Shown here piece by piece: positions 3,602 to 61,354 of a stretch of DNA of 64,000 bases (position 1 is its first letter; each line of letters begins with the position of its first letter). The notes under the pieces are model-generated. The model was not told where the DNA came from and searched no databases. It was given only the letters and a program-made list of their open reading frames with translations. Both the position numbers and the translations under genes were made by a program. The DNA lies in the IMG/VR virus record IMGVR_UViG_3300028920_000001, positions 62,001-126,000 of that record, one strand, 5' to 3'.

Positions 3602-3881
3602 CGGTAACTGCTACGATTGCCTTTTCAAGTGTGTCACAAATTGTATTTAATTCTGAATTATACCGGGACGAAGCTACGAACAAATCACTTGAAATATCAT
3701 CAAATAAGGAATCTTTCAATAATCCTGCAAATACTAATTCCCAAGCTCTGTTTGCTAATTCGTTATATTTTGTAATGAGTTGTTCGGTTCCATATAGCTC
3801 AACAAATCCACTTCTATTAGGATTACTAATTTGGTGATTCGCTATTCTGATAGCTAGATTATGGAGGATTTGGTCGTCCAT
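3546..3881 (-). CDS. hypothetical protein, possible type-A N-terminal leader
   Basis: begins MDDQILHNLAIRIAN. Confidence 0.55.
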   Translation of the reverse strand: MDDQILHNLAIRIANHQISNPNRSGFVELYGTEQLITKYNELANRAWELVFAGLLKDSLFDDISSDLFVASSRYNSELNTICDTLEKAIVAVTGVYKPRHESEECEKCESG

Positions 3882-5049
3882 TACCTATAGCATCTGAATA
3901 AAATTTGAGCATTTTAGGATCATTTTTAATTCGCTTTCTCATTCGAGCTAAAGCCATATTTTCGAGCTGTCGGATTCTTTCACGAGAAAGACTGTATCTG
4001 TTTCCTAATTCCTGAAGGGTGTTTTCTTTTAGGCCAAACCGTGATTCAATTATGTCTTTTTCACGACGAGGCAATCCGGTCATCAATTGATCCACAATTT
4101 CTTTAGTTTCTTTCTCTTCGAGTTGAATATCCGGTTGTTTAACTTTAGAATCCTTAATCATATCCATCAAAGTTGTTATTCCATCATCGCCGATGAGATT
4201 ATCTAAAGAAGCAACTCCCATATCTCTAGCTTTTTGTAAAGTAATAACTTTGTCAGAAGTAATGTTGGCTTTTTGGGCCAAATTTTCTATGGAGATCTGA
4301 TTTCCAGTTCGTACGTAATATTCTTCTTCCAATTTTTCCAAATTATAAATTTTATCTGAAACATGGACTGGATTACGAATTATTTTCATTTTATCTGCTA
4401 AATATCTACGCATGCTTTGTTTGATCCACCAACAAGCATACGTAGAAAATCGAACTTCATTACGCCAATCAAATTTTTCGACGGCTCTCATGAGTCCCAT
4501 ATTACCTTCTTGAATTAAATCCGGTATTAGACCGGCAATATTAATTTTGTATACGAGTGAAACTACTAATCTTAGATTATGTCGAACAATTTGATTTTTA
4601 GTCTCAATACATGGTCTTCTTAATTCCAAAAGTTTATTTATCCAATCAATACCACCATTTTTAAATTCCGCTTTCAATATTTCAAAATATAAATCTGATT
4701 GGATATTTTTAATTAAAGGATGGTTCTTAGATTCTTTGACGTAGAATTTGGAAGCTTTTTCAATTTCTCTGGTTTTAAGTAATTTAATTAGACGTTTCAG
4801 AGGTTTAAGGGCAGCTTGTTTATCTTCTCTTTGACTTCGTGAAAATTTGTCTATATATGAAGTTAAAATCGGAATTGAAATCTTAGGCATACTAACTAGA
4901 TGTTTGAGATATGCATCTTCTTGTTTTTCTAATAACTGAAATATCTCTCTTTCTTCTTCTCGAGAAAATAAAGTATTTTTACTTATGCTCGAGTAATACT
5001 TAATGAAAGATGATTCGGTTGGTTTTTTGCTATGATTTAGGTTCTGCAT
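3859..5049 (-). CDS. RNA polymerase sigma70-family factor (RpoD/RpoS-like)
   Basis: region 2 NLRLVVS...DLIQEGNMGLMRAVEKFD...RFSTYACWWIKQ; region 4 HTH TLQELG..YSLSRERIRQLE. Confidence 0.93.
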   Translation of the reverse strand: MQNLNHSKKPTESSFIKYYSSISKNTLFSREEEREIFQLLEKQEDAYLKHLVSMPKISIPILTSYIDKFSRSQREDKQAALKPLKRLIKLLKTREIEKASKFYVKESKNHPLIKNIQSDLYFEILKAEFKNGGIDWINKLLELRRPCIETKNQIVRHNLRLVVSLVYKINIAGLIPDLIQEGNMGLMRAVEKFDWRNEVRFSTYACWWIKQSMRRYLADKMKIIRNPVHVSDKIYNLEKLEEEYYVRTGNQISIENLAQKANITSDKVITLQKARDMGVASLDNLIGDDGITTLMDMIKDSKVKQPDIQLEEKETKEIVDQLMTGLPRREKDIIESRFGLKENTLQELGNRYSLSRERIRQLENMALARMRKRIKNDPKMLKFYSDAIGNGRPNPP

Positions 5050-5954: not shown

Positions 5955-7142
5955 TCAAACACAATTGTCTATTATTTGCCAGGGAAGGCCATACTTATTC
6001 AAATCTTCCATGAAAGGATCTGGATTTAGTTGTTCCAGACAGAAGGTCCCTACACCTTCCCATTTTCCTTCCATGATCATTTTAGCACCAATCATCGCGG
6101 GAACACCTGTAGTATAAGATACAGCTTGAGATCCTACTTCTTCATAACATTGTTCATGATCACAGTTATTGTAAAGGAATAATGATTTCTTTTCTCCCAT
6201 ATGATTAGTACCTTTAACTAAACAACCAATGCAGGTTTTTCCTTTGGTTCTAACGCCTAATGAAGCCGGAGTTGGAAGAATGAAATCAAGAAATTGAAGA
6301 GGAACAATTTCCTGACCTTTGTAAACGACTGGCTCGATTGAAGTCATTCCGACATTTTCTAAAACATGAAGATGATTTAAATATTGATCTGAAAATGTCA
6401 TCCAAAATCTCATTCGTCTGATTTCAGGAAAATGTTTAGTAAGAGATTCCATTTCTTCATGAAACATCAAATAAGCACGCCGAGTTCCAACTCCGGGAAA
6501 ATCAAAATCTCTGAAATCACTTAATGGTGGAGTTTCTTTCCACTCACCTTCCCAGTACTTTCCTTTTTGGGTGATTTCACGAATATTAATCTCAGTATTG
6601 AAATTAGTAGCAAAGGGATGGCCATGATCACCACCATTGCAATCTAAAATGTCAACGGTTTCTATTTGTTCGAAATTGTGTTTCTTTAAATAAGCAATGA
6701 AGACATTAGTTACACCGGGGTCAAAGCCGCTACCAAGTAAGGCCATGATCCCGGCGTCCTTGAACCTGTCATGGTATTTCCATTGATGAGAATAACTGAA
6801 AGTTAACTGATTTGGAGCTTCATAATTAGCAGTATCAAGATAATGAGTCTTAGTCTGAAGACAAGCTTCCATTATTTTGAGATCCTGATATGGCAAAGCA
6901 GTATTAATAACTATTTCAGGTTCATATTCTTTAATTAAAGCAACGGTTTCTTCAACATTATTAGCATCAAGTTTTTCAGCAATTACGTTAGGTGGATTCT
7001 TTAATCGTTTCTTAACGTCTTGGCATTTAGATAATGTACGACTAGCTAAAACAATACGATCAAAAATCTCTGGAACCTGAAAACATTTTTGAGCAGTTAC
7101 ATTTCCAACTCCACCGAGTCCAATAATCAATATTGTTCCCAT
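5955..7142 (-). CDS. carboxy(nor)spermidine dehydrogenase (saccharopine dehydrogenase family)
   Basis: Rossmann IIGLGGVG, INTALPYQDLKIMEAC..HYLDTANYE, GSGFDPGVTNVF, DILDCNGGDHGHPFATNFN.EINIRE, SQAVSYTTGVPAMIGA. Confidence 0.92.
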   Translation of the reverse strand: MGTILIIGLGGVGNVTAQKCFQVPEIFDRIVLASRTLSKCQDVKKRLKNPPNVIAEKLDANNVEETVALIKEYEPEIVINTALPYQDLKIMEACLQTKTHYLDTANYEAPNQLTFSYSHQWKYHDRFKDAGIMALLGSGFDPGVTNVFIAYLKKHNFEQIETVDILDCNGGDHGHPFATNFNTEINIREITQKGKYWEGEWKETPPLSDFRDFDFPGVGTRRAYLMFHEEMESLTKHFPEIRRMRFWMTFSDQYLNHLHVLENVGMTSIEPVVYKGQEIVPLQFLDFILPTPASLGVRTKGKTCIGCLVKGTNHMGEKKSLFLYNNCDHEQCYEEVGSQAVSYTTGVPAMIGAKMIMEGKWEGVGTFCLEQLNPDPFMEDLNKYGLPWQIIDNCV

Positions 7143-19083: not shown

Positions 19084-19326
19084 TTAATCCTTAATTCCAT
19101 ACCTCTTTTTAGCTTCATGCCAAGCATCGCGATTCCCATATCCACACTGTTGGGACAATCTTGTCTGATATGCAAAAGCCTTTTGTAGATTTTCTTCATC
19201 ATTGTGTTCCATAACATCTTTAACTACTGTAATATCAATTTTTCGTAAAATACGATTCAGCCTTCGGATTTGATATGATAGCACAATTAATAAAACGACA
19301 TTAACAACTGCGATCGCCACGTTCAC
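19084..19326 (-). CDS. small membrane-anchored hypothetical protein
   Basis: N-terminal hydrophobic helix. Confidence 0.55.
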   Translation of the reverse strand: MNVAIAVVNVVLLIVLSYQIRRLNRILRKIDITVVKDVMEHNDEENLQKAFAYQTRLSQQCGYGNRDAWHEAKKRYGIKD

Positions 19327-20080
19327 AATAATTTCGCCTTGCTTTTACTTGAATGATTTCAAATCCATACCTATGATCATCTAGGATAAGTGCTGATAAT
19401 TTTCCGCCAAACACACATCCAGTATCCAATCCAACGCAAAAGATTGGACAATCATGTCCATCCAAAGCTTCAACTACTGGATAGTCATAAGAACGAGGAT
19501 CATGCCCGTATACGACATGGTTTGGTCCATACCATTTTTGAGTCCAGGAAACGGTATCCGGAGGTTGGTCCAATGAATCTTTCTCAAATGGAACCATTAG
19601 TCCATCTTTATCAACGTATCTGACACGAACCAACTTATCTTTGCGTTGTTCAGATAAAGAACGGCCGGGTTCAAATCCGGCATGCACTACATACCAACTA
19701 TGATATTCATCAATCCAAGCATCGATAGCAGTCCATAATTGCATTTCTCGAATCCACTGAATATCATCAGCAGAAAGGGCATCCCACTTCGCCTTTCGTT
19801 CTGGCGCAGGTGAACGCATTGGGTTTTTCTTTCCGGTAGTGGTTCGTTTCTCTTCATGATCTAACCATCGAAGATATTTTTCTTCATGATTTCCTAATAC
19901 TGAATTAGCCTTAATTTCTCGAGCTAATCCGATACACGCTGCCGGGTCGGGTCCCCGATCGATCAGATCTCCGGTAAAAATTACCCGTTCGTCTGCGGCT
20001 GGACCGGCCAGCTTCAGAAGTTCTTGTAGCTCCTGTATGCAGCCGTGAACATCTCCGATGACAATTGTACGATCAGCCAT
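19301..20080 (-). CDS. metallophosphoesterase (ApaH/PrpE/PnkP-phosphatase-like)
   Basis: GDVHG, GDLIDRG, GNHE, VHAG, VYGH, GLDTGCVFGG. Confidence 0.92.
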   Translation of the reverse strand: MADRTIVIGDVHGCIQELQELLKLAGPAADERVIFTGDLIDRGPDPAACIGLAREIKANSVLGNHEEKYLRWLDHEEKRTTTGKKNPMRSPAPERKAKWDALSADDIQWIREMQLWTAIDAWIDEYHSWYVVHAGFEPGRSLSEQRKDKLVRVRYVDKDGLMVPFEKDSLDQPPDTVSWTQKWYGPNHVVYGHDPRSYDYPVVEALDGHDCPIFCVGLDTGCVFGGKLSALILDDHRYGFEIIQVKARRNYCERGDRSC

Positions 20081-26247: not shown

Positions 26248-26459
26248 GATTCCATTACTTCCTTAGCTACATGGAATTTGGATAGTCGCCATTTTCGAAA
26301 TGCAGAAGGAGCCCAATGAACAGAATCATCCAAGGCCCTCCAATGAGGTCGATATCCATCACGGCCATAGAATGCTTTAACCACAATAATCTCCCCATTT
26401 TCGTCTTCTACTTCAACTGGGACTTCATTCGGTGGTTTGCCAGTTTGCCATTCAGTCAT
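26244..26459 (-). CDS. hypothetical protein with C-terminal VMES tag
   Basis: ends VAKEVMES*. Confidence 0.7.
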   Translation of the reverse strand: MTEWQTGKPPNEVPVEVEDENGEIIVVKAFYGRDGYRPHWRALDDSVHWAPSAFRKWRLSKFHVAKEVMES

Positions 26460-27525
26460 TTCTTTTCCAAATGGTTAAAGAATCACGGATTCCGGGCCAT
26501 TGAGGGATAAGTAACTGATCAATACATTCAAATTCTTCTTCTAATTTAGTATAAAATTCATCATTAGCTGTACATCCGCCAATCTCTCCAATATGAATAA
26601 GATAACGACCTTTCCAATATTGTAAACATTCAGTAGCCATATTATCACCATGTGGCGGCCAACATAAGAAGAGTGTTCTATCAGGAAAATTTTTTAATTG
26701 TTTAGGAAAACCTTTGAGCACTTTTCGATATAATTGCCCATTTGGATGCCAAACATTAAATCCATTGGGAGGTGGGAATTTGTCAAAACAAATAACATCC
26801 CCACCACAGATTTCGATTGCTTTACCCCAGTATCCAGTTCCGGCTCCCATTTCTACTACTGGACCAAAATCAATGATCTTTTTAATGGCTTCTTCAGTAG
26901 GAACGGCCCAAGCATACTTATTAACAACATAATCTCTGATATATAAAGGTTGAACAACATTCGAGAGATTTGGAACTTCATTCATATAAGTAAATATTTC
27001 TTTATTTATTCCAAATAGAGAACAAATTCTATCTATATCGAAAGTTCCTAAAGAAGACATCGCATTTAGATGCAGAATATCAAATTCACTGATATTTTCA
27101 GGAGGCGGAGGACAAATCTCTAAATAAATTCGTAGCAATTCATTAAACTTAACAAGCTTGGGATTAGTTGAAGCCCAAGTAAGCATGGCTTCTTTTTGAG
27201 ACTTAGATAATTTCTTAATTCGAGCTTCTTCTTTTCGAGCAATGGTTTCAGTTTCGCAAGCTCGAGACCAAACTAGACTAAAAGGTCCACGTCCCCGCGT
27301 GTATTTTGCTCCCTTACTGTTGATGTGATTGTGAATACGGTCTCGAAGATGATTGGTTATTCCAGTATAAAGAGATCCATCGCCACAACGAAGGATGTAA
27401 ACAAACCAGGTGCCGTCATATATTCCGAATGGATGGAATACTATCGGATCTGTCATGTTTTCTTGGGTTACTGAGCCCACCAATGAATTTACATTAGCTA
27501 TCCATAATTTGATGAGTAATAGCAT
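26452..27525 (-). CDS. GIY-YIG nuclease (UPF0213-like) fused to a SAM-dependent methyltransferase-like domain
   Basis: WFVYILRCGDGSLYTGIT...GAKYTRGRGP...E..IKKL; C-terminal YAWAVPT...VVEMGAGTGYW...FLCWPP. Confidence 0.8.
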   Translation of the reverse strand: MLLLIKLWIANVNSLVGSVTQENMTDPIVFHPFGIYDGTWFVYILRCGDGSLYTGITNHLRDRIHNHINSKGAKYTRGRGPFSLVWSRACETETIARKEEARIKKLSKSQKEAMLTWASTNPKLVKFNELLRIYLEICPPPPENISEFDILHLNAMSSLGTFDIDRICSLFGINKEIFTYMNEVPNLSNVVQPLYIRDYVVNKYAWAVPTEEAIKKIIDFGPVVEMGAGTGYWGKAIEICGGDVICFDKFPPPNGFNVWHPNGQLYRKVLKGFPKQLKNFPDRTLFLCWPPHGDNMATECLQYWKGRYLIHIGEIGGCTANDEFYTKLEEEFECIDQLLIPQWPGIRDSLTIWKRND

Positions 27526-27746: not shown

Positions 27747-28871
27747 CTATGAAAGACGGTCTCTAAAATCTGTATACCCAAATTTTTTAATTAATTCAAA
27801 TTCATTAGTTTCTGGATCATAAGTCATAATCGAGGGTAATCTAATCCCATTGAAAGTATTGGTTTTTACCATCGTATATTGGGCCATATCACAAAAGATA
27901 ATACGATCACCTATTTTTAAAGGTTTAGAAAATGAATAATCTCCAACAATATCACCAGCTAAACAAGTCATACCTCCAAGGCGATACGTATACTGGTACT
28001 TTCCGGGTTTATCCGCTCCTACTATTTCTGGTCGATATGGCATTTCAATTACATCTGGCATATGAGCAGTAGCAGATGTATCTAAAATGGCAATTGGCAT
28101 TTCATTTTTAAAAATATCTAATACACTAGCTACTAACCAACCACAATTATATGCAATGGCTGCACCCGGTTCTAAATAAACTTCGACATCAAATTCCTGC
28201 TTGAAATTTTGAATAATTTTAATTAATTTATAAGTATCATACCATTGAGATGTAATAAGGTGTCCTCCACCAAAATTAACCCACTTTGATAATCGGAGCT
28301 CGGGTTCGAATTTTGACGATACTTTCATTAAAGTTCGTTCTAAAGCATCCGCGTCTTTTTCACATAGATTATGAAAATGCAGTCCGGAGAATCCAATAAA
28401 ATCTTTGGGATCCAATTCTGTTCGAGTAACTCCTAAACGTGAATAACGCTGACATGGATCATAAATTTGAGTTTCAACTTCTGAGTGCTCTGGATTAATT
28501 CGTAATCCACATTCTACCGACTGAATCAAGTTTTTAAATCTATCTCTTTGTGCCGGATTATTGAAAATAATATGATCACAAATTTGAGTAAGTTCTCTTA
28601 ATTCTATTTCTGAATATGCCGGAGCATAAGCGTGTACTTCTCCTTGAAATTGCTCATACCCTAATTGTGCCTCGTATAAAGAACTGGCGGATACTCCAGG
28701 TAAATATTTTCGAATTATCGGGAAAGTGCTCCACATAGAAAAAGCTTTAAGTGCTAATAAGATTTTGCATCCTGAACGAAATTGAACATTAGATAGTAAT
28801 TTAAGATTATGACGTAAAACGCCTAAATCACAAATAAAGGCAGGAGTTTTAATTTGACTGAAATCCACCAA
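27747..28871 (-). CDS. nspC: carboxy(nor)spermidine decarboxylase
   Basis: TPAFI, ILLALKAFS, ASSLYEA.LG, GLRINPE, YDPC..YSRLG, GLHFHNLCE, NFGGGH, YLEPG, MPDVIEMPYRP, TCLAGD, YTMVKTNTFNG. Confidence 0.94.
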   Translation of the reverse strand: MVDFSQIKTPAFICDLGVLRHNLKLLSNVQFRSGCKILLALKAFSMWSTFPIIRKYLPGVSASSLYEAQLGYEQFQGEVHAYAPAYSEIELRELTQICDHIIFNNPAQRDRFKNLIQSVECGLRINPEHSEVETQIYDPCQRYSRLGVTRTELDPKDFIGFSGLHFHNLCEKDADALERTLMKVSSKFEPELRLSKWVNFGGGHLITSQWYDTYKLIKIIQNFKQEFDVEVYLEPGAAIAYNCGWLVASVLDIFKNEMPIAILDTSATAHMPDVIEMPYRPEIVGADKPGKYQYTYRLGGMTCLAGDIVGDYSFSKPLKIGDRIIFCDMAQYTMVKTNTFNGIRLPSIMTYDPETNEFELIKKFGYTDFRDRLS

Positions 28872-33592: not shown

Positions 33593-33783
33593 AGGATACC
33601 CTCGTTACCGTTATAGATGGCGCACAAGCGTTTGGGTATGATATTTAGCTTGTGGACTACATCCATCGATAAATCGGAGATTGAAATTCTACCCGGTTTG
33701 TCGATAGACTTTTAAACGGCCATAACAAACTTGTCTTTGCTATCACGAAAGCACTATACACTAAAAGAAATTATCAATAGCAT

Positions 33784-33849
33784 TCAGGGCGGCCCATGAA
33801 CTGGGTCGCCCTGATTTGAAATGGGTTAAGTCCTATTGGAACTTAACCC
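33784..33849. other. two tandem stem-loops
   Basis: TCAGGGCGGCCCA/TGGGTCGCCCTGA (33784-33814) and GGGTTAAG/CTTAACCC (33823-33849). Confidence 0.6.
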
Positions 33850-33863
33850 GCCTTTCTCATTGT

Positions 33864-33917
33864 ACGGTAACCTTTAATCGCCGGCCCAAATTGGGCAAAA
33901 ATTTGACCAAAGGTCGT
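33864..33917 (-). ncRNA. circularly permuted Y-RNA-like module
   Basis: ACCUUUGGUC-AAAUUUUU-GCCC-AAUUU-GGGC-CGGC-GAUUAAAGGU-UACCG. Confidence 0.65.
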
Positions 33918-33975: not shown

Positions 33976-34105
33976 TAGTGAAAGGGGCAGGATTCGAACC
34001 CGCGACACTATGCTTTGCAACGATAACCCTAATCCTACGACCCGGGACGGGTAAAAAGGCGGAAAAGGTCTCTAACACATGCTCTACCAACTGAGCTACC
34101 CTTTC
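33976..34105 (-). ncRNA. tRNA-scaffold / Y-module chimera 1 (130 nt)
   Basis: acceptor GAAAGGG/CCCUUUC, canonical D and T arms, anticodon loop replaced by about 61 nt containing UUUUUACCC-GUCCC-GGGUCGUAGGAUUAGGGUUAUCG. Confidence 0.8.
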
Positions 34106-34108
34106 AAA

Positions 34109-34178
34109 ACGGGTAAAGAATTGATACCGGACTGTTGTCTTCAGAAAAGAGGGCGATAACCCGATATCTCCGACCCGT
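34109..34178 (-). ncRNA. Y-RNA-like RNA (70 nt)
   Basis: 5' ACGGGUCGGAGAUAUCGGGUUAUCG ... AAUUCUUUACCCGU 3'; promoter motif TGTAAAGT 5 nt upstream. Confidence 0.75.
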
Positions 34179-35050: not shown

Positions 35051-35869
35051 CTACTGGTAGATATTAACTACTGCATTATTACCGTACACTTCTTTAGCTC
35101 GTTGATCATAAGCCATGGCAGCTAATTCTTCTGTTTCAAAACTACCTATAACACGGGTCTTTCCATCGTAAAACAAACGAGCCCTCCAACTTTTACCTCC
35201 TTTTGGTTTATATACTCCCTTATACTTAGAAGTCTTCTTTTTATTCAGGGCTACTCGATCAAAGATGTCTTTCTTTCGTTCCATCCAAACTGAAGCATCT
35301 TTGTACATCCATTCTTTAATACGTAGTATTTCATATTTGCTGCTCCATTGAATCTTGTGGCATTTCTGAAATATAATTTTAGTATTCCTAATACTAAGCC
35401 TGTTTACCAAGATTGATTTAATGAATTGAACGAATTCGTATGTTCCAACAAAATAAACACAAAATAATCCATTCTTCTTTTGACTTATTCCTCCATCTCC
35501 GTCAAAATATCCTCGTATGAAATGATGGACTAATTCTAAAGGAATATAGTCGAATACTTTAGAATTTAATACTTTAGTCTTCTGCTTTGGTACGTCTTTG
35601 TCTAAAATAGAATTACATAAATATTTAGAAGATAACAAACATCGAACATGCTCATAGTTTTTACGAGTTCTTTTATCGTAAGAAGTTTTAATTCGCACAG
35701 AAACATTAAATATGGAAGCCAATTTATCTAAATGCAATTTATCTTTAGATGATAAATAAAAACAAACCTGTTTTCCATTTGGATAAATGCATCCATCGGC
35801 ACAGAAGAATCCAAACCAGTAGGCTTGCTCTTCTGTGCCGATGGTGTCGAAGAATTCTTGTCTCTTCAT
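35051..35869 (-). mobile_element. LAGLIDADG homing endonuclease with C-terminal AP2 domain
   Basis: YWFGFFCADGCI, HFIRGYFDGDGGI; AP2 KYKGVY...WRARL...IGSFETEELAAMAYD. Confidence 0.88.
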
Positions 35870-35891: not shown

Positions 35892-37637
35892 TTAAAATTC
35901 TCCTTTGGAGAAAGAAGAAATAAGATCGGGGACTGAAGTATCCATGCCACAAATGTCCAACATTCCAGGATCACGCGGGTCAGCGATGGTAAATTTATCG
36001 CTGGTTAGACCGCAAACAATCAGCCGAGCTTGACGGCCCATTTCCTGCCGATACTTACGCAGGGCCTGAAAGGGCTGCATGCGGCCGGCCCACGTTTCAT
36101 TGTCCGTGTAGACCATGAACGTATCAACTTCGATCTTGTGCTTTAGAGCATACAGCATTGGCTGTGAGCAATCAGTTCCACCGAAGTCTTGACGGGCAGT
36201 GACTTCACAAACCTGATCCAGCCGCATTTTCGGGCTGATATTCAGAACAGTTACGCCACTATCAGGATCGCTGGAAGAATTATTACGACTACCCCAACCC
36301 CAACCGCCACCGGATTCACAAGTGAATCCGATTACCTGCCAATTCTGCTCGAGCTTAGCAGTAACCATGGCCATAGCAGCTGCGGCTTCACGACAAGTCA
36401 AAGTACCACATCCTTGGATGGCAGAGCCCATAGACCCAGAAACATCCAAAGCAAGCAAGTAGTTTTTACCTGTCGGCTGAACTGACTTGAATGCCGTATA
36501 AAATGCAGAATCCATGGCATCAATTACTTGAGTTACTGGGCTCCAGCTGAGTTTACCCTTATCACCATGACCAGATTGATACTGCTTCATAGCAATCAGG
36601 ATCTTCATCGGGTGAAGACGACTCTTACGGATGGCTTCCTCGTTGGCGAACTGTTCAGCTACTTTCTTGGAAGCGGCACTCATCGGCTTGATTAGTCCAC
36701 AAGCCGTCATAACTCCCAAATTACGCGTTAGCGCTGTCATCGGAAGACCACGGTCGAGCAGAGCCTCCCAAATCTCAGGCTCTTTCTTCCACTGAGTCGG
36801 AAGCATCTCATGGCTGAGCCAATATTCATGAATCAACTTGATTACTTCCGCCTTTGATTCGGCCAGCTGGACGGCTTCGAAACCATGGACCAGCTTCGGC
36901 AGAGCTTCCCGATTGAGCTCCTCATAGGAGTCCATACGAGAGTCCTTCTTCTGGCCCTTTCTGAGCACTTCTCGGGCCTCGAGGCTACCATCTTGGGTAA
37001 CCCACCGAAATAGCGCTTGATAAGCTCCGGAATCCATTTCCGGGTCACGACGGACCAATTCAAATGGGTTGGCGTGGCTCAGCTTCAGAAGATCCTTGTG
37101 GGACCATCCATTTCGTTGCTGATACTTGACCAATTGAAGAGCCAACTTATCGGCCGGCTTATCGAGATACCAATTAGCTACAGCATTCCGAAGAGCCCGT
37201 CCCCAACGCCGGAAATTCTCAACATCAGCCGCAAAGTTGAATAGATCAGTACCAATACGGCAAACCTTCGGTAAAGCTTGAAGGGCCGCCTTTCGCACTT
37301 CATTATCCGAATGACCGGCTGCCATGGCGAGACAGAATACTGCCGGATCATTTTTGACCGCACGACCTGCCTGGCTGATTTCAGCGATACGCTTGACTGT
37401 CCGGATACCGTCTTGTTTCAGACACTCCCCAATTGCCTTAGCATTTTCCTTGACGAGCTTTTTCTCGCCAACGTAATAAGTCGAACCCTCAGCACCAAGA
37501 ATCAAAAACCGGTCTAAGCTAGTCCAGCAATCGACCTGCCAAACATAACCGCCTGCACGGTTCTTGACCTGATCCTCACGAGCTTGCTCACTCTGAGAAG
37601 TTACTCGTGGATTGACAATTTCTCCATACCTGGTCAT
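35892..37637 (-). CDS. rsr: Ro60 / TROVE-domain RNA-binding protein with vWA domain (Rsr-like)
   Basis: start MTRYG at 37637 after AGGAG; NRAGGY, LDRFLILGAEG.TYY, KYQQRNGWSHKDLLKLSH, ALTRNLG.MT, RLHP, vWA LALDVSGSM, TDNETW, D..MLD.CG.D. Confidence 0.93.
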   Translation of the reverse strand: MTRYGEIVNPRVTSQSEQAREDQVKNRAGGYVWQVDCWTSLDRFLILGAEGSTYYVGEKKLVKENAKAIGECLKQDGIRTVKRIAEISQAGRAVKNDPAVFCLAMAAGHSDNEVRKAALQALPKVCRIGTDLFNFAADVENFRRWGRALRNAVANWYLDKPADKLALQLVKYQQRNGWSHKDLLKLSHANPFELVRRDPEMDSGAYQALFRWVTQDGSLEAREVLRKGQKKDSRMDSYEELNREALPKLVHGFEAVQLAESKAEVIKLIHEYWLSHEMLPTQWKKEPEIWEALLDRGLPMTALTRNLGVMTACGLIKPMSAASKKVAEQFANEEAIRKSRLHPMKILIAMKQYQSGHGDKGKLSWSPVTQVIDAMDSAFYTAFKSVQPTGKNYLLALDVSGSMGSAIQGCGTLTCREAAAAMAMVTAKLEQNWQVIGFTCESGGGWGWGSRNNSSSDPDSGVTVLNISPKMRLDQVCEVTARQDFGGTDCSQPMLYALKHKIEVDTFMVYTDNETWAGRMQPFQALRKYRQEMGRQARLIVCGLTSDKFTIADPRDPGMLDICGMDTSVPDLISSFSKGEF

Positions 37638-37695
37638 GGTTTTTTCTCCTTGAACGGCCCGAAATTCAGGCAAAAACCCAGATAGCGAAATCTGG
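37638..37695 (-). promoter_or_regulatory. Y-RNA-like module in the Ro60 5' UTR overlapping its Shine-Dalgarno
   Basis: GGUUUUU-GCCUG-AAUUU-CGGGC-CGUUC-AAGGAG-AAAAAACC-AUG. Confidence 0.6.
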
Positions 37696-39236: not shown

Positions 39237-39524
39237 CTAAGAATGCATGATAGAACGAATTTTATCTAAATTTATTCTATCTCTACAAGAACATCCGTGA
39301 GAATCTTTTAAATTATTGGCTGGCATTCCGTCTTGAATTATACATAATTTACAATATTTACATGTCCAAACAATTTCTGCTATGTCATATCTAGTTGTGG
39401 CCAAAGCCCAAGTCCAAATATGAAAATCGATAAAGATATTTTTATGGCTGGCCCGGCAAGGCTCGAACTTGCGACTTTCGGATTCAAAGTCCGACGTTCT
39501 ACCAACTGAACTACGGGCCATCAT
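39237..39524 (-). CDS. hypothetical protein with IMHS tag; frame runs through tRNA-Gln
   Basis: ends KIRSIMHS*; the only ATGs are at the tRNA 5' edge. Confidence 0.5.
   Translation of the reverse strand: MMARSSVGRTSDFESESRKFEPCRASHKNIFIDFHIWTWALATTRYDIAEIVWTCKYCKLCIIQDGMPANNLKDSHGCSCRDRINLDKIRSIMHS
39445..39520 (-). tRNA. tRNA-Gln(UUG)
   Basis: UGGCCCG/CGGGCCA, UCGGA-CUUUGAA-UCCGA, CCA encoded. Confidence 0.93.
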
Positions 39525-39525
39525 C

Positions 39526-39804
39526 TTATATTTCCATTATTGCTCGAACTTGTTTTAAGCTACGAGCTTGTTGAACTAATGGATCTATGACTTCTCGGCT
39601 AGTATTCCACCAAGAGCGCCATCCTAAGTCTTCAGGAGGCTCAACCTCAGCTAATTCAAACAATCGTTTTAAATGGTCTTTATGTACTAAACCTAGTGGA
39701 GTTCGACAATGACACCAAAGATAGCTTAATAAATCATCGTCATCTTTAAATGATTCCATATTATTCTTCTTCATCTTCATCTTCAACAGGTTCAGTAGAC
39801 TCAA
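39526..39804 (-). CDS. hypothetical protein with variant tag (IMEI)
   Basis: ends QVRAIMEI*; start probably MESFK. Confidence 0.6.
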   Translation of the reverse strand: MSLLNLLKMKMKKNNMESFKDDDDLLSYLWCHCRTPLGLVHKDHLKRLFELAEVEPPEDLGWRSWWNTSREVIDPLVQQARSLKQVRAIMEI

Positions 39805-50466: not shown

Positions 50467-50503
50467 ATTATGGACGGCACAAATCTGAACATACGATAAC
50501 CAT

Positions 50504-50633
50504 TAGTGCCCCGAACAGGATTTGAACCTGTAACATCCGGCTTGAATGGCGATAACCCTTATCCTCCGGCCCGAATCGGGCAAAAAATCGGCAAGGATAT
50601 TTTACGGCGCTCTATCCGTTGAGCTATCGGGGC
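50504..50633 (-). ncRNA. tRNA-scaffold / Y-module chimera 2 (130 nt)
   Basis: acceptor GCCCCGA/UCGGGGC, D and T arms canonical; insert AUCCUUGCCGAUUUUUUGCCCG-AUU-CGGGCCGGAGGAUAAGGGUUAUCGCC. Confidence 0.8.
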
Positions 50634-50673
50634 GATAGAACTTTTTGCCTCGAGAAGGCCTCGAGAAAAGTTC

Positions 50674-50748
50674 TGGTGCGGAGAACAAGAATCGAACTTG
50701 TCTACAACGCTATGTCAAAGCGTGCTCATCCCAGATGAGTATCTCCGC
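50674..50748 (-). tRNA. tRNA-Val(GAC)
   Basis: ACGCU-UUGACAU-AGCGU, CCA encoded. Confidence 0.9.
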
Positions 50749-50750
50749 AA

Positions 50751-50880
50751 ACGGGCAAAAAATCGTGAATGGATGTTGAAGGTTGGATTCGAACCAACGA
50801 CCTCCGGATGTTAGTCCGGCGCTCTAACCACTGAGCTACTCGCTCGATTGATGGGCGATAACCCACACACTCCGGCCCGT
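50751..50880 (-). ncRNA. Y-RNA-like RNA carrying an internal degenerate tRNA cloverleaf (130 nt)
   Basis: 5' ACGGGCCGGAGUGUGUGGGUUAUCGCC ... D-arm, CCGGA-CUAACA-UCCGG (6-nt loop), T-arm ... AUCCAUUCACGAUUUUUUGCCCGU 3'; 2-nt spacers to flanking tRNAs. Confidence 0.75.
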
Positions 50881-50882
50881 AT

Positions 50883-50959
50883 TGGTGGAGCGCCTGGGAA
50901 TTGAACCCAGCACAGGTCGCTTATCAGGCGTCCTAGGTCAGACCAGACGCTTACGCTCC
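50883..50959 (-). tRNA. tRNA-Ile(GAU)
   Basis: loop CU-GAU-AA, CCA encoded. Confidence 0.85.
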
Positions 50960-55117: not shown

Positions 55118-55963
55118 TCATAACCTTGATGTCTTGAACAAATTCCTGCCATCTCGTTTCTTTCTGCCTGTTAGTTCATATAATGAAGTGCCATTTCTCA
55201 TTAGCCAACAATCAATTGAAATCCAAGTTCTTCCGTCAGTTGACTGACAACTTTTCTTATCCCGATTAACAATAGGGAGTCTTCCAGTTTGAACAAAGAA
55301 ATCTTTGATCCATGATTTAATTAACGGGATTGTAAATGATGGATATGAACGAGTCTTTAGACCAAGCTTCTCTTTCATATAGATTCCTGTACTCATTTTA
55401 TGATTTTTACGAATCCATTCACCAATAGTTCTCCAGTCCCATCCATTAGTAAATTCGTTGCCTTTATGCGGAACTTTTTGGTATTTTGCATAATAGAGTT
55501 TAATCCAACTATCAACAGATGCTTTGGTTAGTGGAACATGTGGTCCTTTAAAACCAATAAACTCTGGTGTTACCCTCTTAGTTTCTATCCTCTGTTTAAT
55601 TGGCTTTCTTCTATCAAATTTTTTATCTAGAGCTCGAGCTTTCTTTAAAGTTATGAGTCTCAAGTTATCTCTGCAGAAATTTAACTTATTCCCATCTAGA
55701 TGATAAATAACGTATCCTCTTTTCCCTTTCTTTCCTTTAATGAAATACTTCAGATTATGACATGGTTCTCCAATACTATGTAGAGAATGGACCTGTTTGC
55801 CTTTTTTCCATACCCACTTATATTCATTAACTCGATCCCAGTCCTTTTCATCAATTAATGCAAAATTTCCATTTCCCACTTCTATCCATTGTTTACCAGG
55901 CTTTTTTCGTGGTTTCGGATGTCCGTAGGTAGATGACGGTTTTGGCACATTATTATTGTACAT
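55118..55963 (-). mobile_element. HNH-related homing endonuclease homolog with repeated C-terminal DNA-binding-like units
   Basis: FALIDEKDWDRVNEYKW...YHLDGNKLNFCRDNL; repeated 'I.SWIK.(Y/F)...G..P...W..I..W.R'. Confidence 0.65.
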
Positions 55964-56877: not shown

Positions 56878-56942
56878 ACGGGCAAAAAATTGACGGAAGG
56901 CAGTTTCGTTTACAAGGCGATAACCTTCAATCTCCGGCCCGT
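56878..56942 (-). ncRNA. Y-RNA-like RNA (65 nt)
   Basis: ACGGGCCGGAGAUUGAAGGUUAUCGCC...CCUUCCGUCAAUUUUUUGCCCGU; 2 nt upstream of tRNA-Thr. Confidence 0.75.
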
Positions 56943-58143: not shown

Positions 58144-58217
58144 TAGCGGGCTGTCATGGGATCGAACCATGAGCAGTGGACTTGGAAACCACTATGTTGC
58201 CATTACACCAACAGCCC
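58144..58217 (-). tRNA. tRNA-Trp(CCA)
   Basis: GUGGU-UUCCAAG-UCCAC, G73. Confidence 0.88.
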
Positions 58218-58936
58218 TAAGCCGCTTTCTTAAAGAATTTTCTGGAATTCTTTAATTTCTCTTTGTCTGTTTCATCCCAAATCTTTTTCTTACGCTTCAT
58301 GAAAATGGTTGCGTCTTTGTACATCCATTCACAGAGAAGCATTGAATCGTACTGATTAAATATCAACTTCTGAGCTTTTCCATTAGCAATCTTTTTGTTT
58401 CCCACAGGAATAAACTCACGGAGCTTCTGTTTAAAATCTTCTAAGAAATTTCCGGTGTCATTCCCGGCAGTGAAAGAAGTTCCTAAAGCAGAAATACGTC
58501 TCCCGTGTCGATTATTGTAATGCTTGTAATATATAGACCCATCCCCATCGAAATAGCCACGTACAAAATGATGAAAATACTTGTTAGGAATTTTGGGATA
58601 AGAGTATTTAAATGACTTCTTTCTAGTACCTCCAAAACTTATTAATTTATTGACCATATGATTACTTCCAAATCTAACAAATCCATACGACGATCCCCTA
58701 CCATAGGATTTTGGGTTAGAACTAATGATTTGAATCTTTTTCTTTAGTTTCATTAAATCAATTATCATTTCAAGATGATCAACATCTTTCCCAGAAAAAC
58801 TTATTCTAGCATGAGACCTCTTCCCATTCTTACGATGTCTGATGTATATACTTCCATCAGCCCACCAGAATCCAAACACGTAGGCTGAAGCTTCATTCCA
58901 TTGATCAAAGAATTTTTCGTTAACTCTCCAATTCAC
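58217..58936 (-). mobile_element. LAGLIDADG homing endonuclease, free-standing, abutting tRNA-Trp
   Basis: AYVFGFWWADGSI, HFVRGYFDGDGSI. Confidence 0.88.
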
Positions 58937-61135: not shown

Positions 61136-61166
61136 AAGTCAATTTACATTTGCGCCCTAATTTGCA

Positions 61167-61238
61167 GTAGGAGAGCGGGTATCGAACCCGCAATGTTTGA
61201 TTCGAGGTCAGATGTTTATCCATTAAACGATAACCTAC
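61167..61238 (-). tRNA. tRNA-Arg(UCG)-like, imperfect acceptor; 5' strand overlaps the Y motif GGUUAUCG
   Basis: D-arm GUUU/AAAC, loop CC-UCG-AA, T-arm GCGGG/CCCGC; preceded by GGGCCGGACGCGUG (61251-61238). Confidence 0.65.
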
Positions 61239-61254
61239 ACGCGTCCGGCCCATA

Positions 61255-61354
61255 TAGTCCGGGAGATAAGATTTGAACTTACGATAACCATCCTTCAACG
61301 GCCCGTACACGGGCAAAGAACGATGGACGGATGGCCGCCATGGCCAACTCCCGG
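61255..61354 (-). ncRNA. tRNA-scaffold / Y-module chimera 3 (100 nt, no anticodon stem)
   Basis: acceptor CCGGGAG/CUCCCGG, D-arm GGCC/GGCC, T-arm GUAAG-UUCAAAU-CUUAU; insert UUCUUUGCCCGU-GU-ACGGGCCGUUGAAGGAUGGUUAUC. Confidence 0.75.

What the first reader, a model, noticed from the sequence alone, without database searches (positions are those of the whole stretch)
50751..50880. The inverse chimera: a Y RNA carrying a whole degenerate tRNA in its loop, punctuated by flanking tRNAs
Seen: canonical Y ends (ACGGGC/GCCCGU, upper stem GUGUGUGGGU/AUCCAUUCAC with a GUG/CAC pair) enclose a cloverleaf with good D and T arms, a 6-nt anticodon loop (CUAACA) and a mismatched acceptor. It sits exactly 2 nt from tRNA-Ile upstream and tRNA-Val downstream. 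The 56878 Y RNA likewise ends 2 nt before tRNA-Thr, and the 34109 Y RNA ends 3 nt before chimera 1. Inference: Y RNAs are excised by tRNA-processing nucleases (tRNA punctuation), and tRNA and Y modules have recombined in both topologies.
Basis: partly seen in the sequence, partly recalled or inferred. Interest (0 to 1): 0.68.

Follow-up and report, generated by a model that had tools for sequence, protein, structure and literature searches.

The report
Phage Y RNA with tRNA-shaped core
This 130-base gene in a giant phage is a Y RNA (partner of the phage's own Ro60 protein) whose middle folds like a tRNA in the natural arm order; it is wedged 2 bases from a tRNA on each side, a rarer layout of a known RNA class rather than a new kind of molecule.

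Summary
On the minus strand, 50880..50751 has a 6-bp closing stem, a CCGGAG bulge region, a 10-position upper stem and a GGUUAUCG motif. These enclose a tRNA-like core (Rfam tRNA 49.9 bits) with intact D, anticodon and T arms, a 6-nt loop CUAACA and only 3 inner acceptor pairs. tRNA-Ile ends 2 nt upstream and tRNA-Val starts 2 nt downstream.

The same strand encodes a Ro60/Rsr protein (37673..35892). The 5' motif CGGGCCGGA..GGUUAUC marks Y RNA arrays just upstream of rsr in about 40 other viral contigs, so the element is best read as a Y RNA.

Two syntenic contigs hold homologues that keep the structure through compensatory changes. They also keep the junctions, although the flanking tRNA cassettes were swapped. 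More distant relatives with the same D-anticodon-T order lie next to rsr in at least five other contigs.

It is not an unprecedented chimera. tRNA-like domains are a known feature of bacterial and phage Y RNAs. YrlA has the permuted T-acceptor-D order; this element has the order described only for Deinococcus Yrn1, which also has a 6-nt loop.

Maturation by tRNA-processing nucleases is plausible (no room for a promoter, U at -1) but untested, and tight tRNA abutment is lineage-specific. Verdict: a new variant of a known kind, of moderate interest.

The parts
50751..50880 (-). Whole element: Y RNA with an internal tRNA-like domain in D-anticodon-T order (130 nt)
   Evidence: Homologues at L192:4231-4361, L190:588-715 and L197:2714-2846. 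The element-type model R2 scores it 140.5 bits (it is a training member).
50875..50880 (-). 5' strand of the closing stem (ACGGGC)
   Evidence: Pairs with 50751-50756. These pairs are invariant or covarying in A1 and A2.
50751..50756 (-). 3' strand of the closing stem (GCCCGU)
50871..50878 (-). GGGCCGGA: conserved 5'-strand motif, the presumed Ro60/Rsr contact region
   Evidence: Invariant in 18 of 18 rsr-adjacent Y RNAs. Aligns to CGGUCCGGAG of the nematode sbRNA model. Chen 2014 reports Rsr protection of the analogous 5'-strand bases in Yrn1.
50861..50870 (-). Upper stem, 5' strand (GUGUGUGGGU)
   Evidence: Pairs with 50765-50774. Covariation in the family.
50765..50774 (-). Upper stem, 3' strand (AUCCAUUCAC)
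50856..50863 (-). GGUUAUCG motif directly after the upper stem, a family hallmark
   Evidence: Exact matches in 4 Y modules of the window. Invariant GGUUA.C in A2. Also present in the sbRNA consensus.
50842..50860 (-). 19-nt 5' linker containing an AUCAAUC stretch (CCAAUC in relatives)
   Evidence: Alignment A1 and L176.
50777..50845 (-). tRNA-like core
   Evidence: Rfam RF00005 at 49.9 bits against a gathering score of 29. Not called by ARAGORN.
50821..50836 (-). D arm (GCUC-AGUGGUUA-GAGC, with GG for the elbow contact)
   Evidence: (100% of cells paired).
50804..50819 (-). Anticodon-like arm: 5-bp stem with a 6-nt loop CUAACA (50809-50814)
   Evidence: The loop is UUAACA in L190 and 7-nt CUAACAA in L192.
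50782..50798 (-). T arm (GUUGG-UUCGAAU-CCAAC)
   Evidence: Compensatory change to GUGGG/CCCAC in L192 and L197, and to GCAGG/CCUGC in L183.
50757..50764 (-). GAUUUUUU: U-rich 3' side of the internal loop opposite CCGGAG
   Evidence: RNAalifold pairs GGA with the U run.
50883..50959 (-). Upstream tRNA-Ile(GAU) ending in an encoded CCA; AU spacer at 50881-50882
   Evidence: The junction CCA-AU-ACGGGCC is kept in L190 and L192 although their tRNA-Ile is only 59-63% identical.
50674..50748 (-). Downstream tRNA-Val(GAC); UU spacer at 50749-50750
   Evidence: The spacer is UU in L190 and UUU in L192.
35892..37673 (-). Ro60/Rsr orthologue (593 aa), the presumed protein partner
   Evidence: Pfam TROVE 1.5e-42 and vWA_Ro60 2e-62. 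PDB Ro60 matches at 2.5e-123. PHROG 850.
34109..34178 (-). Simple Y RNA 1.7 kb downstream of rsr on the same strand
   Evidence: External-family model R1 scores it 37.4 bits, E 7e-6. sbRNA model E 0.0044.
56878..56942 (-). Simple Y RNA ending 2 nt before tRNA-Thr
   Evidence: R1 scores it 45.2 bits, E 1.6e-7. Sequence.

Best explanation
The element is a Y RNA gene of a 427-kb phage. Its paired 5' and 3' ends form the Ro60 (Rsr)-binding module: a closing stem, the conserved GGGCCGGA strand with a bulge or internal loop, an upper stem, and the GGUUAUCG motif. Its 'loop' is a tRNA-shaped effector domain in natural D-anticodon-T order.

That domain keeps the parts that give a tRNA its L shape: U8, the D arm with GG, a 5-nt variable loop and a T arm with UUCGAAU. 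It is disabled as a tRNA in three ways: the acceptor is only 2-3 bp, there are no free ends, and the anticodon loop is off-size.

The gene has no room for its own promoter or terminator, so it is transcribed within a tRNA operon (Leu-Ile-element-Val...). RNase P cleavage at the 5' end of tRNA-Val would leave the Y RNA 3' end as GCCCGU plus UU. An endonucleolytic cut in the AU after the CCA of tRNA-Ile would free the 5' end. The vestigial acceptor probably protects the RNA from internal RNase P cleavage.

The mature RNA would bind phage Rsr. As shown for other Ro60-Y RNA particles, it would then tether or gate Rsr towards another factor, either PNPase or a tRNA-recognising protein.

Shown: the sequence anatomy, conservation and covariation, the Rsr gene, the family association with rsr, and junction conservation. 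Inferred: transcription unit, cleavage sites, Rsr binding and downstream function.
For: 1. Partner protein. A Ro60/Rsr orthologue lies on the same strand.
2. Motif association with rsr. The 5' motif finds 111 viral stretches. In 42 loci the motif-bearing candidates sit next to an Rsr tblastn hit, mostly within 1 kb upstream on the same strand.
3. Family structure. Eighteen such RNAs give a consensus closing stem plus upper stem, with 7 covarying pairs.
4. Independent detection. Model R1, built from those RNAs only, finds the two simple Y RNAs of the window at E 1.6e-7 and 7e-6. A 5'-half HMM from the same set ranks this element first in the window.
5. Conserved structure. On 5 sequences of this type, 90.7% of cells are paired against 33-46% in slid controls. 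Ten pairs changed on both sides against 1-3. RNAalifold independently recovers the Y stems plus D, anticodon and T arms, and no acceptor.
6. Other members. Same-order relatives lie beside rsr in L079/L197, L176, L127, L093 and L183. Their cores pass the Rfam tRNA threshold, in three of them (L192, L190, L079) over model positions 6-65 only.
7. Junctions. CCA-AU-Y and Y-UU(U)-tRNA are kept in L190 and L192 while tRNA-Ile (59-63% identity) and tRNA-Val (68% in L190) were replaced.
8. RNase P context. Position -1 of every abutting tRNA is U, which matches the established RNase P preference.
9. Transcription unit. No minus-strand promoter-like site lies between 51516 and 50391, and the next terminator-like site is at 50304-50288.
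10. Cultured phage. Gordonia phage Forza has unannotated Y RNAs between the tmRNA and tRNA-Arg and between tRNA-Ile and tRNA-Met.
11. Literature. Y RNAs with tRNA-like domains occur in bacteria and phages, and Yrn1 has the D/anticodon/T order with a 6-nt loop (PMC4201824). A phage Ro60 binds phage Y-like RNAs and host PNPase (PMC12135203).
Against: - No expression, end-mapping or binding data exist for this uncultured phage.
- The element is 13 kb from rsr, outside the 4-kb rule used by Chen et al.
- It reaches no Rfam Y-family gathering score: the sbRNA model gives 18.9 bits at E 0.5, and no YrlA or Y_RNA match covers the element.
- Its thermodynamic fold alone is unremarkable (z -1.85).
- Between relatives the element is no more conserved (86-87%) than the region average, whereas the neighbouring insert-bearing tRNA is 97-100% conserved.
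- Tight tRNA abutment is rare in the family, in 3 of 65 candidates.
- How the 5' end would be cut from a CCA-ending tRNA 2 nt away is unknown.
Confidence: 0.65

Rival explanations
1. Recent recombination chimera. A complete tRNA gene was inserted into the loop of a simple Y RNA not long ago and is now decaying. The tRNA part has no function of its own.
For: The core scores much higher on the tRNA model (49.9 bits here, 57.5 in L192) than the cores of distant relatives with the same layout (about 32 bits). The element keeps both the family's GGUUAUCG motif, which forms the D-like hairpin in the compact relative at 61251, and a separate full D arm, as if a tRNA had been added. The tRNA cassettes in this region are clearly mobile.
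Against: No tRNA in the window is more than 71% identical to the core, which is background level. The degenerate 2-3 bp acceptor and the linkers are shared by L190 and L192, and in form by L197 and L176. Stems are kept by compensatory changes, as in the T stem. The same layout recurs beside rsr in unrelated contigs.
Confidence: 0.13
2. Two-piece or processed Y RNA. The internal tRNA-like domain is itself cut by RNase P and/or 3' processing enzymes, as happens to M. smegmatis YrlA. The functional species would then be fragments held together by the Y stems, or a released tRNA-like RNA.
For: [quoted passage not shown] Some relatives have 6-7 bp acceptors (L093, L183). L181/L203 and L200 show the Y 5' motif in front of intact tRNAs.
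Against: In this element and its close relatives only 2-3 acceptor pairs remain. Chen 2014 found cleavage only where the acceptor had 7 bp. RNAalifold predicts no acceptor helix. L181/L203 and L200 have no Rsr hit in the fetched DNA, so they may be chance matches.
Confidence: 0.1
3. Rsr-independent element. It is a tRNA mimic or processing and insulator structure within the tRNA operon, for example a decoy for a tRNA-binding enzyme or a folding or cleavage guide. Its terminal stem only resembles Y RNA.
For: It lies 13 kb from rsr, inside a tRNA operon. Rfam Y-family scores are below threshold.
Against: The 5' half is the best match in the window to a profile built from rsr-adjacent RNAs of other contigs. 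The conserved motifs are identical to those of the simple Y RNA 1.7 kb downstream of rsr. Five relatives with the same layout lie directly upstream of rsr.
Confidence: 0.08
4. Decayed tRNA pseudogene whose flanks are complementary by chance.
For: ARAGORN rejects it. The acceptor is mismatched and the loop has 6 nt.
Against: The flanks carry a 25-nt family motif (E 1e-4) plus 16 complementary positions. The whole unit is conserved with covariation in other contigs.
Confidence: 0.03

Closest known systems
Deinococcus radiodurans Yrn1 (Y RNA; Chen et al. 2000 and 2014, PMC4201824)
   Same: The Ro-binding helix keeps both metazoan-like strands. The tRNA-like module lies between the stem strands in the order D-like, anticodon arm, T arm. 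The anticodon arm has a 5-bp stem and a 6-nt loop.
   Different: Yrn1 lacks a full D arm and a variable region, and the authors found no orthologues. This element has a complete D arm, a variable loop and a 3-bp acceptor remnant, and it scores 49.9 bits on the tRNA model. It is phage-encoded and sits in a tRNA operon.
YrlA (Rfam RF02553; Salmonella, M. smegmatis, mycobacteriophages)
   Same: A Y RNA whose effector module mimics tRNA. It is encoded with Rsr, and phage examples are known.
   Different: YrlA runs T arm, then a closed acceptor stem-loop, then D arm. Its Y stem stands in the anticodon-stem position and it has no anticodon arm. This element runs D, anticodon, T with the Y stem on the acceptor side. 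RF02553 gives no match over the element. Its motif is GNCGAA, whereas this family has GCCGGA. In this window the YrlA-like layout is taken by the insert-bearing tRNAs at 33979-34105 and 50507-50633, which have open acceptor ends.
Metazoan Y RNAs and nematode stem-bulge RNAs (RF00019, RF01656)
   Same: The closing helix with CGG(U/G)CCGGAG, an upper stem followed by GGGUUAUC, and a U-rich 3' side and tail. The window's Rsr scores higher against human and Xenopus Ro60 (416 and 411 bits) than against D. radiodurans Rsr (337 bits).
   Different: Matches are below the gathering score: 18.9-24.9 bits against 38. Metazoan Y RNAs have no tRNA domain and are Pol III transcripts with their own terminator.
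Thermus phage phiLo Ro60 with Yrl1 and Yrl2 (PMC12135203)
   Same: A phage-encoded Ro60 with phage-encoded Y-like RNAs. It forms a complex with host PNPase.
   Different: The Yrl RNAs lie just upstream of the Ro60 gene and carry a CGAA motif. No tRNA-like domain or tRNA-operon context is reported.
tRNA-punctuated RNA maturation (mitochondrial punctuation model; RNase P-generated 3' ends of RNAs upstream of tRNAs or tRNA-like structures)
   Same: An RNA with no terminator of its own is delimited by flanking tRNAs. RNase P cleavage at the tRNA 5' end would create its 3' end.
   Different: Here the delimited RNA is a Y RNA in a phage tRNA array. The arrangement is lineage-specific and its processing is untested.

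Membership tests
Y RNA (Ro60/Rsr-binding ncRNA) | The genome encodes a Ro60/Rsr orthologue | tested here: met
   ORF 37673..35892: TROVE 1.5e-42, vWA_Ro60 2e-62. PDB Ro60 2.5e-123.
Y RNA (Ro60/Rsr-binding ncRNA) | The 5' and 3' ends pair into a bulged helix with a conserved 5'-strand motif | tested here: met
   Closing and upper stems. The GGGCCGGA motif is invariant in rsr-adjacent RNAs. The 5'-half HMM gives E 1e-4, the best hit in the window.
Y RNA (Ro60/Rsr-binding ncRNA) | Encoded within about 4 kb of rsr on the same strand (criterion of Chen et al. 2014) | tested here: not met
   Same strand, but about 13 kb away. The criterion is met by the window's Y RNA at 34109-34178 and by same-layout relatives in L079, L176, L127, L093 and L183.
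Y RNA (Ro60/Rsr-binding ncRNA) | Physical binding to Ro60/Rsr | not testable with these tools
   Needs a gel-shift assay or co-immunoprecipitation.
Y RNA (Ro60/Rsr-binding ncRNA) | Reaches the gathering score of an Rfam Y family (RF00019, RF01656, RF02553) | tested here: not met
   Best is RF01656 at 18.9 bits against 38, E 0.5. RNAs with the YrlA arm order in related contigs also fail RF02553, so this test has low power for this phage family.
YrlA (RF02553) | tRNA-like domain in the order T arm, closed acceptor stem-loop, D arm, with the Y stem replacing the anticodon stem | tested here: not met
   The order here is D, anticodon, T, with the Y stem on the acceptor side.
YrlA (RF02553) | GNCGAAN0-1G motif in the Rsr-binding strand | tested here: not met
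   The element has GCCGGAG.
Yrn1-type Y RNA (D. radiodurans) | Both strands of the metazoan-like Ro-binding helix retained | tested here: met
   Both strands align to the sbRNA consensus in the window's simple Y RNAs. This element has the same strands.
Yrn1-type Y RNA (D. radiodurans) | D-like region, then anticodon arm (5-bp stem, 6-nt loop), then T arm between the stem strands | tested here: met
   Described for Yrn1 in PMC4201824.
Yrn1-type Y RNA (D. radiodurans) | Sequence homology to Yrn1 | not tested
Chen et al. found no orthologues by BLAST.
tRNA | Cloverleaf that scores above the Rfam tRNA gathering score | tested here: met
   49.9 bits against 29.
tRNA | 7-bp acceptor stem with free 5' and 3' (CCA) ends | tested here: not met
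   Three of 7 positions are mismatched and both ends continue into the Y stem. Relatives match only model positions 6-65.
tRNA | 7-nt anticodon loop | tested here: not met
   6 nt (CUAACA) here, 6 nt in L190, 7 nt in L192. ARAGORN makes no call.

The most novel reading that the evidence does not exclude
Y RNAs with the D-anticodon-T layout form a distinct, undescribed class. They would present an uncleavable anticodon arm (3- or 6-nt loop) on a true tRNA elbow. Bound to phage Rsr, they could act as decoys or sensors for host anticodon nucleases or other tRNA-targeting defences, or deliver Rsr and PNPase to the tRNA-processing machinery. Their placement inside tRNA operons would tie their amount to phage tRNA output. 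Hughes et al. 2020 raised nuclease inhibition as a possibility for YrlA, which has no anticodon arm. This class has one.
Probability: 0.1. Interest if true: 0.8.

Novelty: new variant of a known kind. Interest (0 to 1): 0.5.

Why it matters
What the tRNA-like domain of bacterial Y RNAs does is still an open question. This element and its relatives show three things:

- A second architecture, known so far only from one Deinococcus RNA, recurs in phages. Here it occurs in a much more tRNA-like form that includes an anticodon arm.
- One phage can carry simple Y RNAs, Y RNAs with the Y stem on the acceptor side, and tRNA-shaped RNAs with a Y hairpin on the anticodon side. That is a natural series for working out which tRNA features matter.
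- Y RNA genes can be built into tRNA operons, so that tRNA-processing enzymes would make their ends.

The arrangement also exists in a cultured phage (Gordonia phage Forza), so the processing idea can be tested directly.

Tried and rejected
- **Model R1 on the element.** The simple Y RNA model could not span the 130-nt element and returned only a truncated 11-bit match. I scored the halves with HMMs instead. The 3' half is uninformative because it is defined only by complementarity.
- **Pattern CGGAG..GGGTTATCGCC.** It returned 69 viral stretches, nearly all chance matches in coding DNA without a closing stem, and was not used further.
- **GenBank phages.** A blastn of the region found only generic tRNA similarity and no relative.
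- **Donor tRNA in the window.** None found; best identity 71%.
- **L181/L185/L187/L191/L194/L203 (Chloroflexi MAG) and L200 (Dormibacterota MAG).** They show the 5' motif in front of intact tRNA-Arg or tRNA-Gly, but no Rsr gene is in the fetched DNA and the closure is weak. I left these as uncertain.
- **Full-length R2 hits at 40-50 bits.** Most are ordinary tRNAs with forced flanks, for example window 39427-39547, L073, L167, L090 and L114.
- **tRNA abutment as a family rule.** Rejected.
- **Two Wolin-lab reviews (PMC10870794, PMC6047535).** Not held in the library.
- **Single-sequence folding.** Not decisive (z -1.85).

Full report
**What is there**

The window is part of a 426,960-bp viral contig (IMGVR_UViG_3300028920_000001 = Ga0272441_10000011). 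It carries 24 tRNA calls and a tmRNA, all on the minus strand.

The element runs from 50880 to 50751 on that strand and is 130 nt long. Its parts, from the outside in, are:

- ACGGGC at the 5' end pairs with GCCCGU at the 3' end.
- CCGGAG follows, lying opposite a U-rich stretch.
- A 10-position upper stem comes next (GUGUGUGGGU with AUCCAUUCAC, one U.U mismatch).
- The motif GGUUAUCG follows the upper stem.
- A 19-nt linker leads into a tRNA-like core.
- A 5-nt linker leads back to the upper stem.

Rfam's tRNA model matches the core (50845..50777) at 49.9 bits, E 1.5e-9. The core has:

- U8;
- a D arm with the GG needed for the elbow;
- a 5-bp anticodon stem with a 6-nt loop, CUAACA;
- a 5-nt variable loop;
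- a canonical T arm.

Three of the seven acceptor pairs are mismatched, and ARAGORN does not call it a tRNA.

tRNA-Ile(GAU) ends with an encoded CCA at 50883, followed by AU. tRNA-Val(GAC) begins at 50748 after UU.

**Why it is a Y RNA**

The same strand encodes a 593-aa Ro60/Rsr orthologue at 37673..35892. Pfam gives TROVE and vWA_Ro60 domains. Solved Ro60 structures match at E 2.5e-123.

I scanned IMG/VR for the 5' motif CGGGCCGGA-N5-8-GGTTATC and found 111 stretches. In 42 loci the motif-bearing candidates lie next to a tblastn match to Rsr, usually within 1 kb upstream on the same strand and often in tandem arrays.

Eighteen short RNAs from such loci align to a consensus of closing stem plus upper stem, with seven covarying pairs. 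A covariance model built from them contains no window sequence. It finds the window's two simple Y RNAs at 45.2 bits (E 1.6e-7) and 37.4 bits (E 7e-6). The model cannot span a 130-nt RNA, so I used a 5'-half HMM from the same alignment. That HMM ranks this element first in the window (19.1 bits, E 1e-4).

The simple Y RNAs also align, below threshold, to the nematode stem-bulge (Y RNA homologue) model. They share CGG.CCGGAG, GGGUUAUC and the 3' strand with its consensus. No Rfam Y family reaches its gathering score on the element. RNAs in related contigs that clearly have the YrlA arm order also fail the YrlA model, so this negative carries little weight.

**Conservation of the whole unit**

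A metagenome scan found two close homologues: L192:4231-4361, and L190:588-715 (identical to L196). It also found a distant one, L197:2714-2846, which is the same as L079:698-830.

The close homologues are 86-87% identical to the element. Changes fall in the linkers and loops or are compensatory:

- The T stem changes from GUUGG/CCAAC to GUGGG/CCCAC.
- In the upper stem a G-U pair becomes A-U.
- The loop is UUAACA in L190 and the 7-nt CUAACAA in L192.

On a five-sequence alignment, 90.7% of cells form pairs, against 33-46% when the 3' partners are slid. Ten pairs changed on both sides, against 1-3 in the slid controls. RNAalifold independently predicts the two Y stems and the D, anticodon and T arms. 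It predicts no acceptor helix. With five sequences this is supportive, not conclusive.

A model of this layout then found further members:

- L176:690-822 (68.8 bits);
- L127:7840-7960 (57.9 bits);
- L093:779-905 (46.6 bits);
- L183:226-343, which was a training member.

L079, L176, L127, L093 and L183 all lie within about 1.5 kb upstream of an rsr gene on the same strand. Their anticodon-like arms end in a GUA triloop (L197, L176, L127) or a 6-nt loop (L183, L093). None has a canonical 7-nt loop.

Their cores pass the Rfam tRNA threshold. For L192, L190 and L079 the match covers model positions 6-65 only, that is, without the acceptor.

**Relation to what is known**

Chen et al. 2014 (PMC4201824) reported Y RNAs with tRNA-like domains near rsr in more than 250 bacteria and in 22 phages. 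In their YrlA class the order is T arm, closed acceptor stem-loop, D arm, and the Y stem takes the place of the anticodon stem.

About 20 of my 156 motif-bearing candidates show that order.

The same paper describes D. radiodurans Yrn1 as having the opposite orientation. Yrn1 has a 5-bp anticodon-like stem and a 6-nt loop, and a Ro-binding helix that keeps both metazoan-like strands. The authors found no Yrn1 orthologues. The present element fits that description and is far more tRNA-like.

It is now seen to recur in phages. In this window the YrlA-like layout is represented by the insert-bearing tRNAs at 33979-34105 and 50507-50633. These have a Y hairpin in the anticodon position and open acceptor ends.

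No tRNA in the window is close to the core (71% identity at most). The degenerate acceptor is shared by relatives. Both points argue against a recent capture.

**tRNA punctuation**

The junctions are conserved in L190 and L192 even though the flanking genes were swapped. tRNA-Ile is only 59-63% identical, and tRNA-Val is 68% identical in L190. Yet CCA-AU-ACGGGCC and GCCCGU-UU(U)-G persist.

Position -1 of every abutting tRNA is U, the nucleotide that bacterial RNase P prefers (established knowledge). Two nucleotides leave no room for a promoter. The consensus scan finds no minus-strand promoter-like site between 51516 and 50391, and the next terminator-like site is at 50304-50288. That is weak evidence.

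In L176 the element of this type begins 5 nt after a tRNA-Gly. In L079 a tRNA-Arg follows after 11 nt.

In the cultured Gordonia phage Forza, rsr is followed by a tRNA and tmRNA array. The external Y model finds unannotated Y RNAs exactly between the tmRNA and tRNA-Arg (36.2 bits, E 3.8e-6) and between tRNA-Ile and tRNA-Met (17.7 bits).

However, only 3 of 65 closed Y candidates in viral contigs abut a tRNA. The arrangement is therefore lineage-specific. Cleavage itself is an inference.

**Mechanism proposed**

Shown:
- the anatomy of the element;
- its conservation;
- the partner gene;
- the family association with rsr;
- the conserved junctions.

Inferred:
- The element is co-transcribed with the tRNAs.
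- RNase P cutting at tRNA-Val sets its 3' end, leaving a UU tail.
- An endonuclease cutting after the CCA of tRNA-Ile sets its 5' end.
- The vestigial acceptor spares the RNA from internal RNase P cleavage. Chen et al. saw such cleavage only with a 7-bp acceptor.
- The RNA binds phage Rsr through the terminal helix. It presents a tRNA-shaped, non-chargeable and non-decodable module to a partner.

Two candidate partners are named in the literature. One is PNPase (D. radiodurans, Salmonella and phage phiLo; PMC12135203). The other is a tRNA-recognising enzyme; Hughes et al. 2020 suggested anticodon-nuclease inhibition for YrlA (PMC7790460).

One caution: between relatives the element is no better conserved than its surroundings, whereas the neighbouring insert-bearing tRNA is 97-100% conserved.

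**Verdict**

It is best explained as a Y RNA with a Yrn1-type tRNA-like domain embedded in a phage tRNA operon. It is a new variant of a known kind, of moderate interest, and it can be tested in a cultured phage system.

Noticed in passing
window 50507-50633 (-) and 33979-34105 (-): Two 127-nt 'tRNAs' (Rfam tRNA 49.0 and 48.1 bits) have a 61-65-nt closed Y hairpin in place of the anticodon loop, a 3'-half/triloop/5'-half of the Y stem. This is topologically YrlA with open acceptor ends. The one at 50507-50633 is 100% identical in L192 and 97% in L190, far more conserved than its surroundings.
   Followed up: partly
window 61258-61354 (-): A third RNA of this kind. A 7-bp stem CCGGGAG/CUCCCGG closes a four-way junction with a small hairpin, a closed Y hairpin (GCCCGU-GU-ACGGGC) and a T-arm-like hairpin. 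It folds at z -3.26, with 0 of 200 shuffles folding as well. Neither Rfam's tRNA model nor ARAGORN calls it.
   Followed up: partly
window 61150-61253 (-): A compact Y-like RNA in D-anticodon-T order. The 5' motif GGGCCGGA..GGUUAUCG is present, and UUAUC pairs with GAUAA to form the D-like hairpin. It has a 7-nt-loop anticodon arm and a T arm. Rfam's tRNA model gives 35.9 bits at 61167-61237. The closing stem is poor and the fold is unremarkable (z -0.41).
   Followed up: partly
window ~33780-33895 (-): A Y 5'-half-like sequence (GGGCCGGCGAUUAAAGGUUACC) lies just downstream of the insert-bearing tRNA at 33979, followed by two strong hairpins. No 3' closure was identified.
   Followed up: no
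window 50634-50673 and 50467-50506 (-): A 40-nt near-perfect hairpin (GAACUUUU-CUCGAG..CUCGAG-AAAAGUUC) lies between tRNA-Val and the insert-bearing tRNA, and is 95% conserved in L190 and L192. After that RNA comes a short AUGG-UUAUCG...CCAU element that resembles the top of a Y RNA without the lower stem.
   Followed up: no
L167:536-887 (IMGVR_UViG_3300046517_002960, 190 kb): A bacterial class A RNase P RNA (261 bits) is encoded inside a large tRNA array. The array is followed by several Y RNAs and an rsr gene on a contig classed as viral. RNase P RNA, tRNAs and Y RNAs are thus linked on one contig.
   Followed up: no
L211 (Gordonia phage Forza MK814760) 6371-6435 and 6934-7003: Unannotated Y RNAs lie in a cultured phage, between the tmRNA and tRNA-Arg and between tRNA-Ile and tRNA-Met, directly downstream of the Ro-like gene.
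   Followed up: partly
window 50883-50959 and 50674-50748 compared with L190 and L192: tRNA genes around the element are exchanged as cassettes between otherwise syntenic relatives. tRNA-Ile is 59-63% identical and tRNA-Val is 99% identical in one relative but 68% in the other. tRNA-Leu(CAG) stays at 99%.
   Followed up: partly
window 35892-37673 (-): By phmmer, the phage Rsr scores higher against human and Xenopus Ro60 (416 and 411 bits, near full length) than against D. radiodurans Rsr (337 bits). This parallels the metazoan-like Y RNA stem motifs.
   Followed up: no
window 35051-35869, 26452-27525, 55118-55963, 58217-58936 (-): Homing-endonuclease-type genes (LAGLIDADG with an AP2 domain, GIY-YIG, HNH and another endonuclease) are scattered among the RNA genes. 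One lies directly downstream of rsr.
   Followed up: no
window 13832-14185 (-), 18541-18615 (-): A phage tmRNA (106.5 bits, tag ANDNASLAIAA). ARAGORN also calls a tRNA-SeC(UCA); Rfam's tRNA model scores it 55.4 bits. Its identity as a selenocysteine tRNA or a suppressor is unchecked.
   Followed up: no
window 5955-7142, 27747-28871, 3859-5049, 19301-20080 (-): Auxiliary genes: a saccharopine-dehydrogenase-family enzyme and an Orn/DAP/Arg decarboxylase-like protein (possibly polyamine synthesis), a full sigma-70 factor, and a phosphoesterase with weak similarity to an RNA-ligase PHROG.
   Followed up: no
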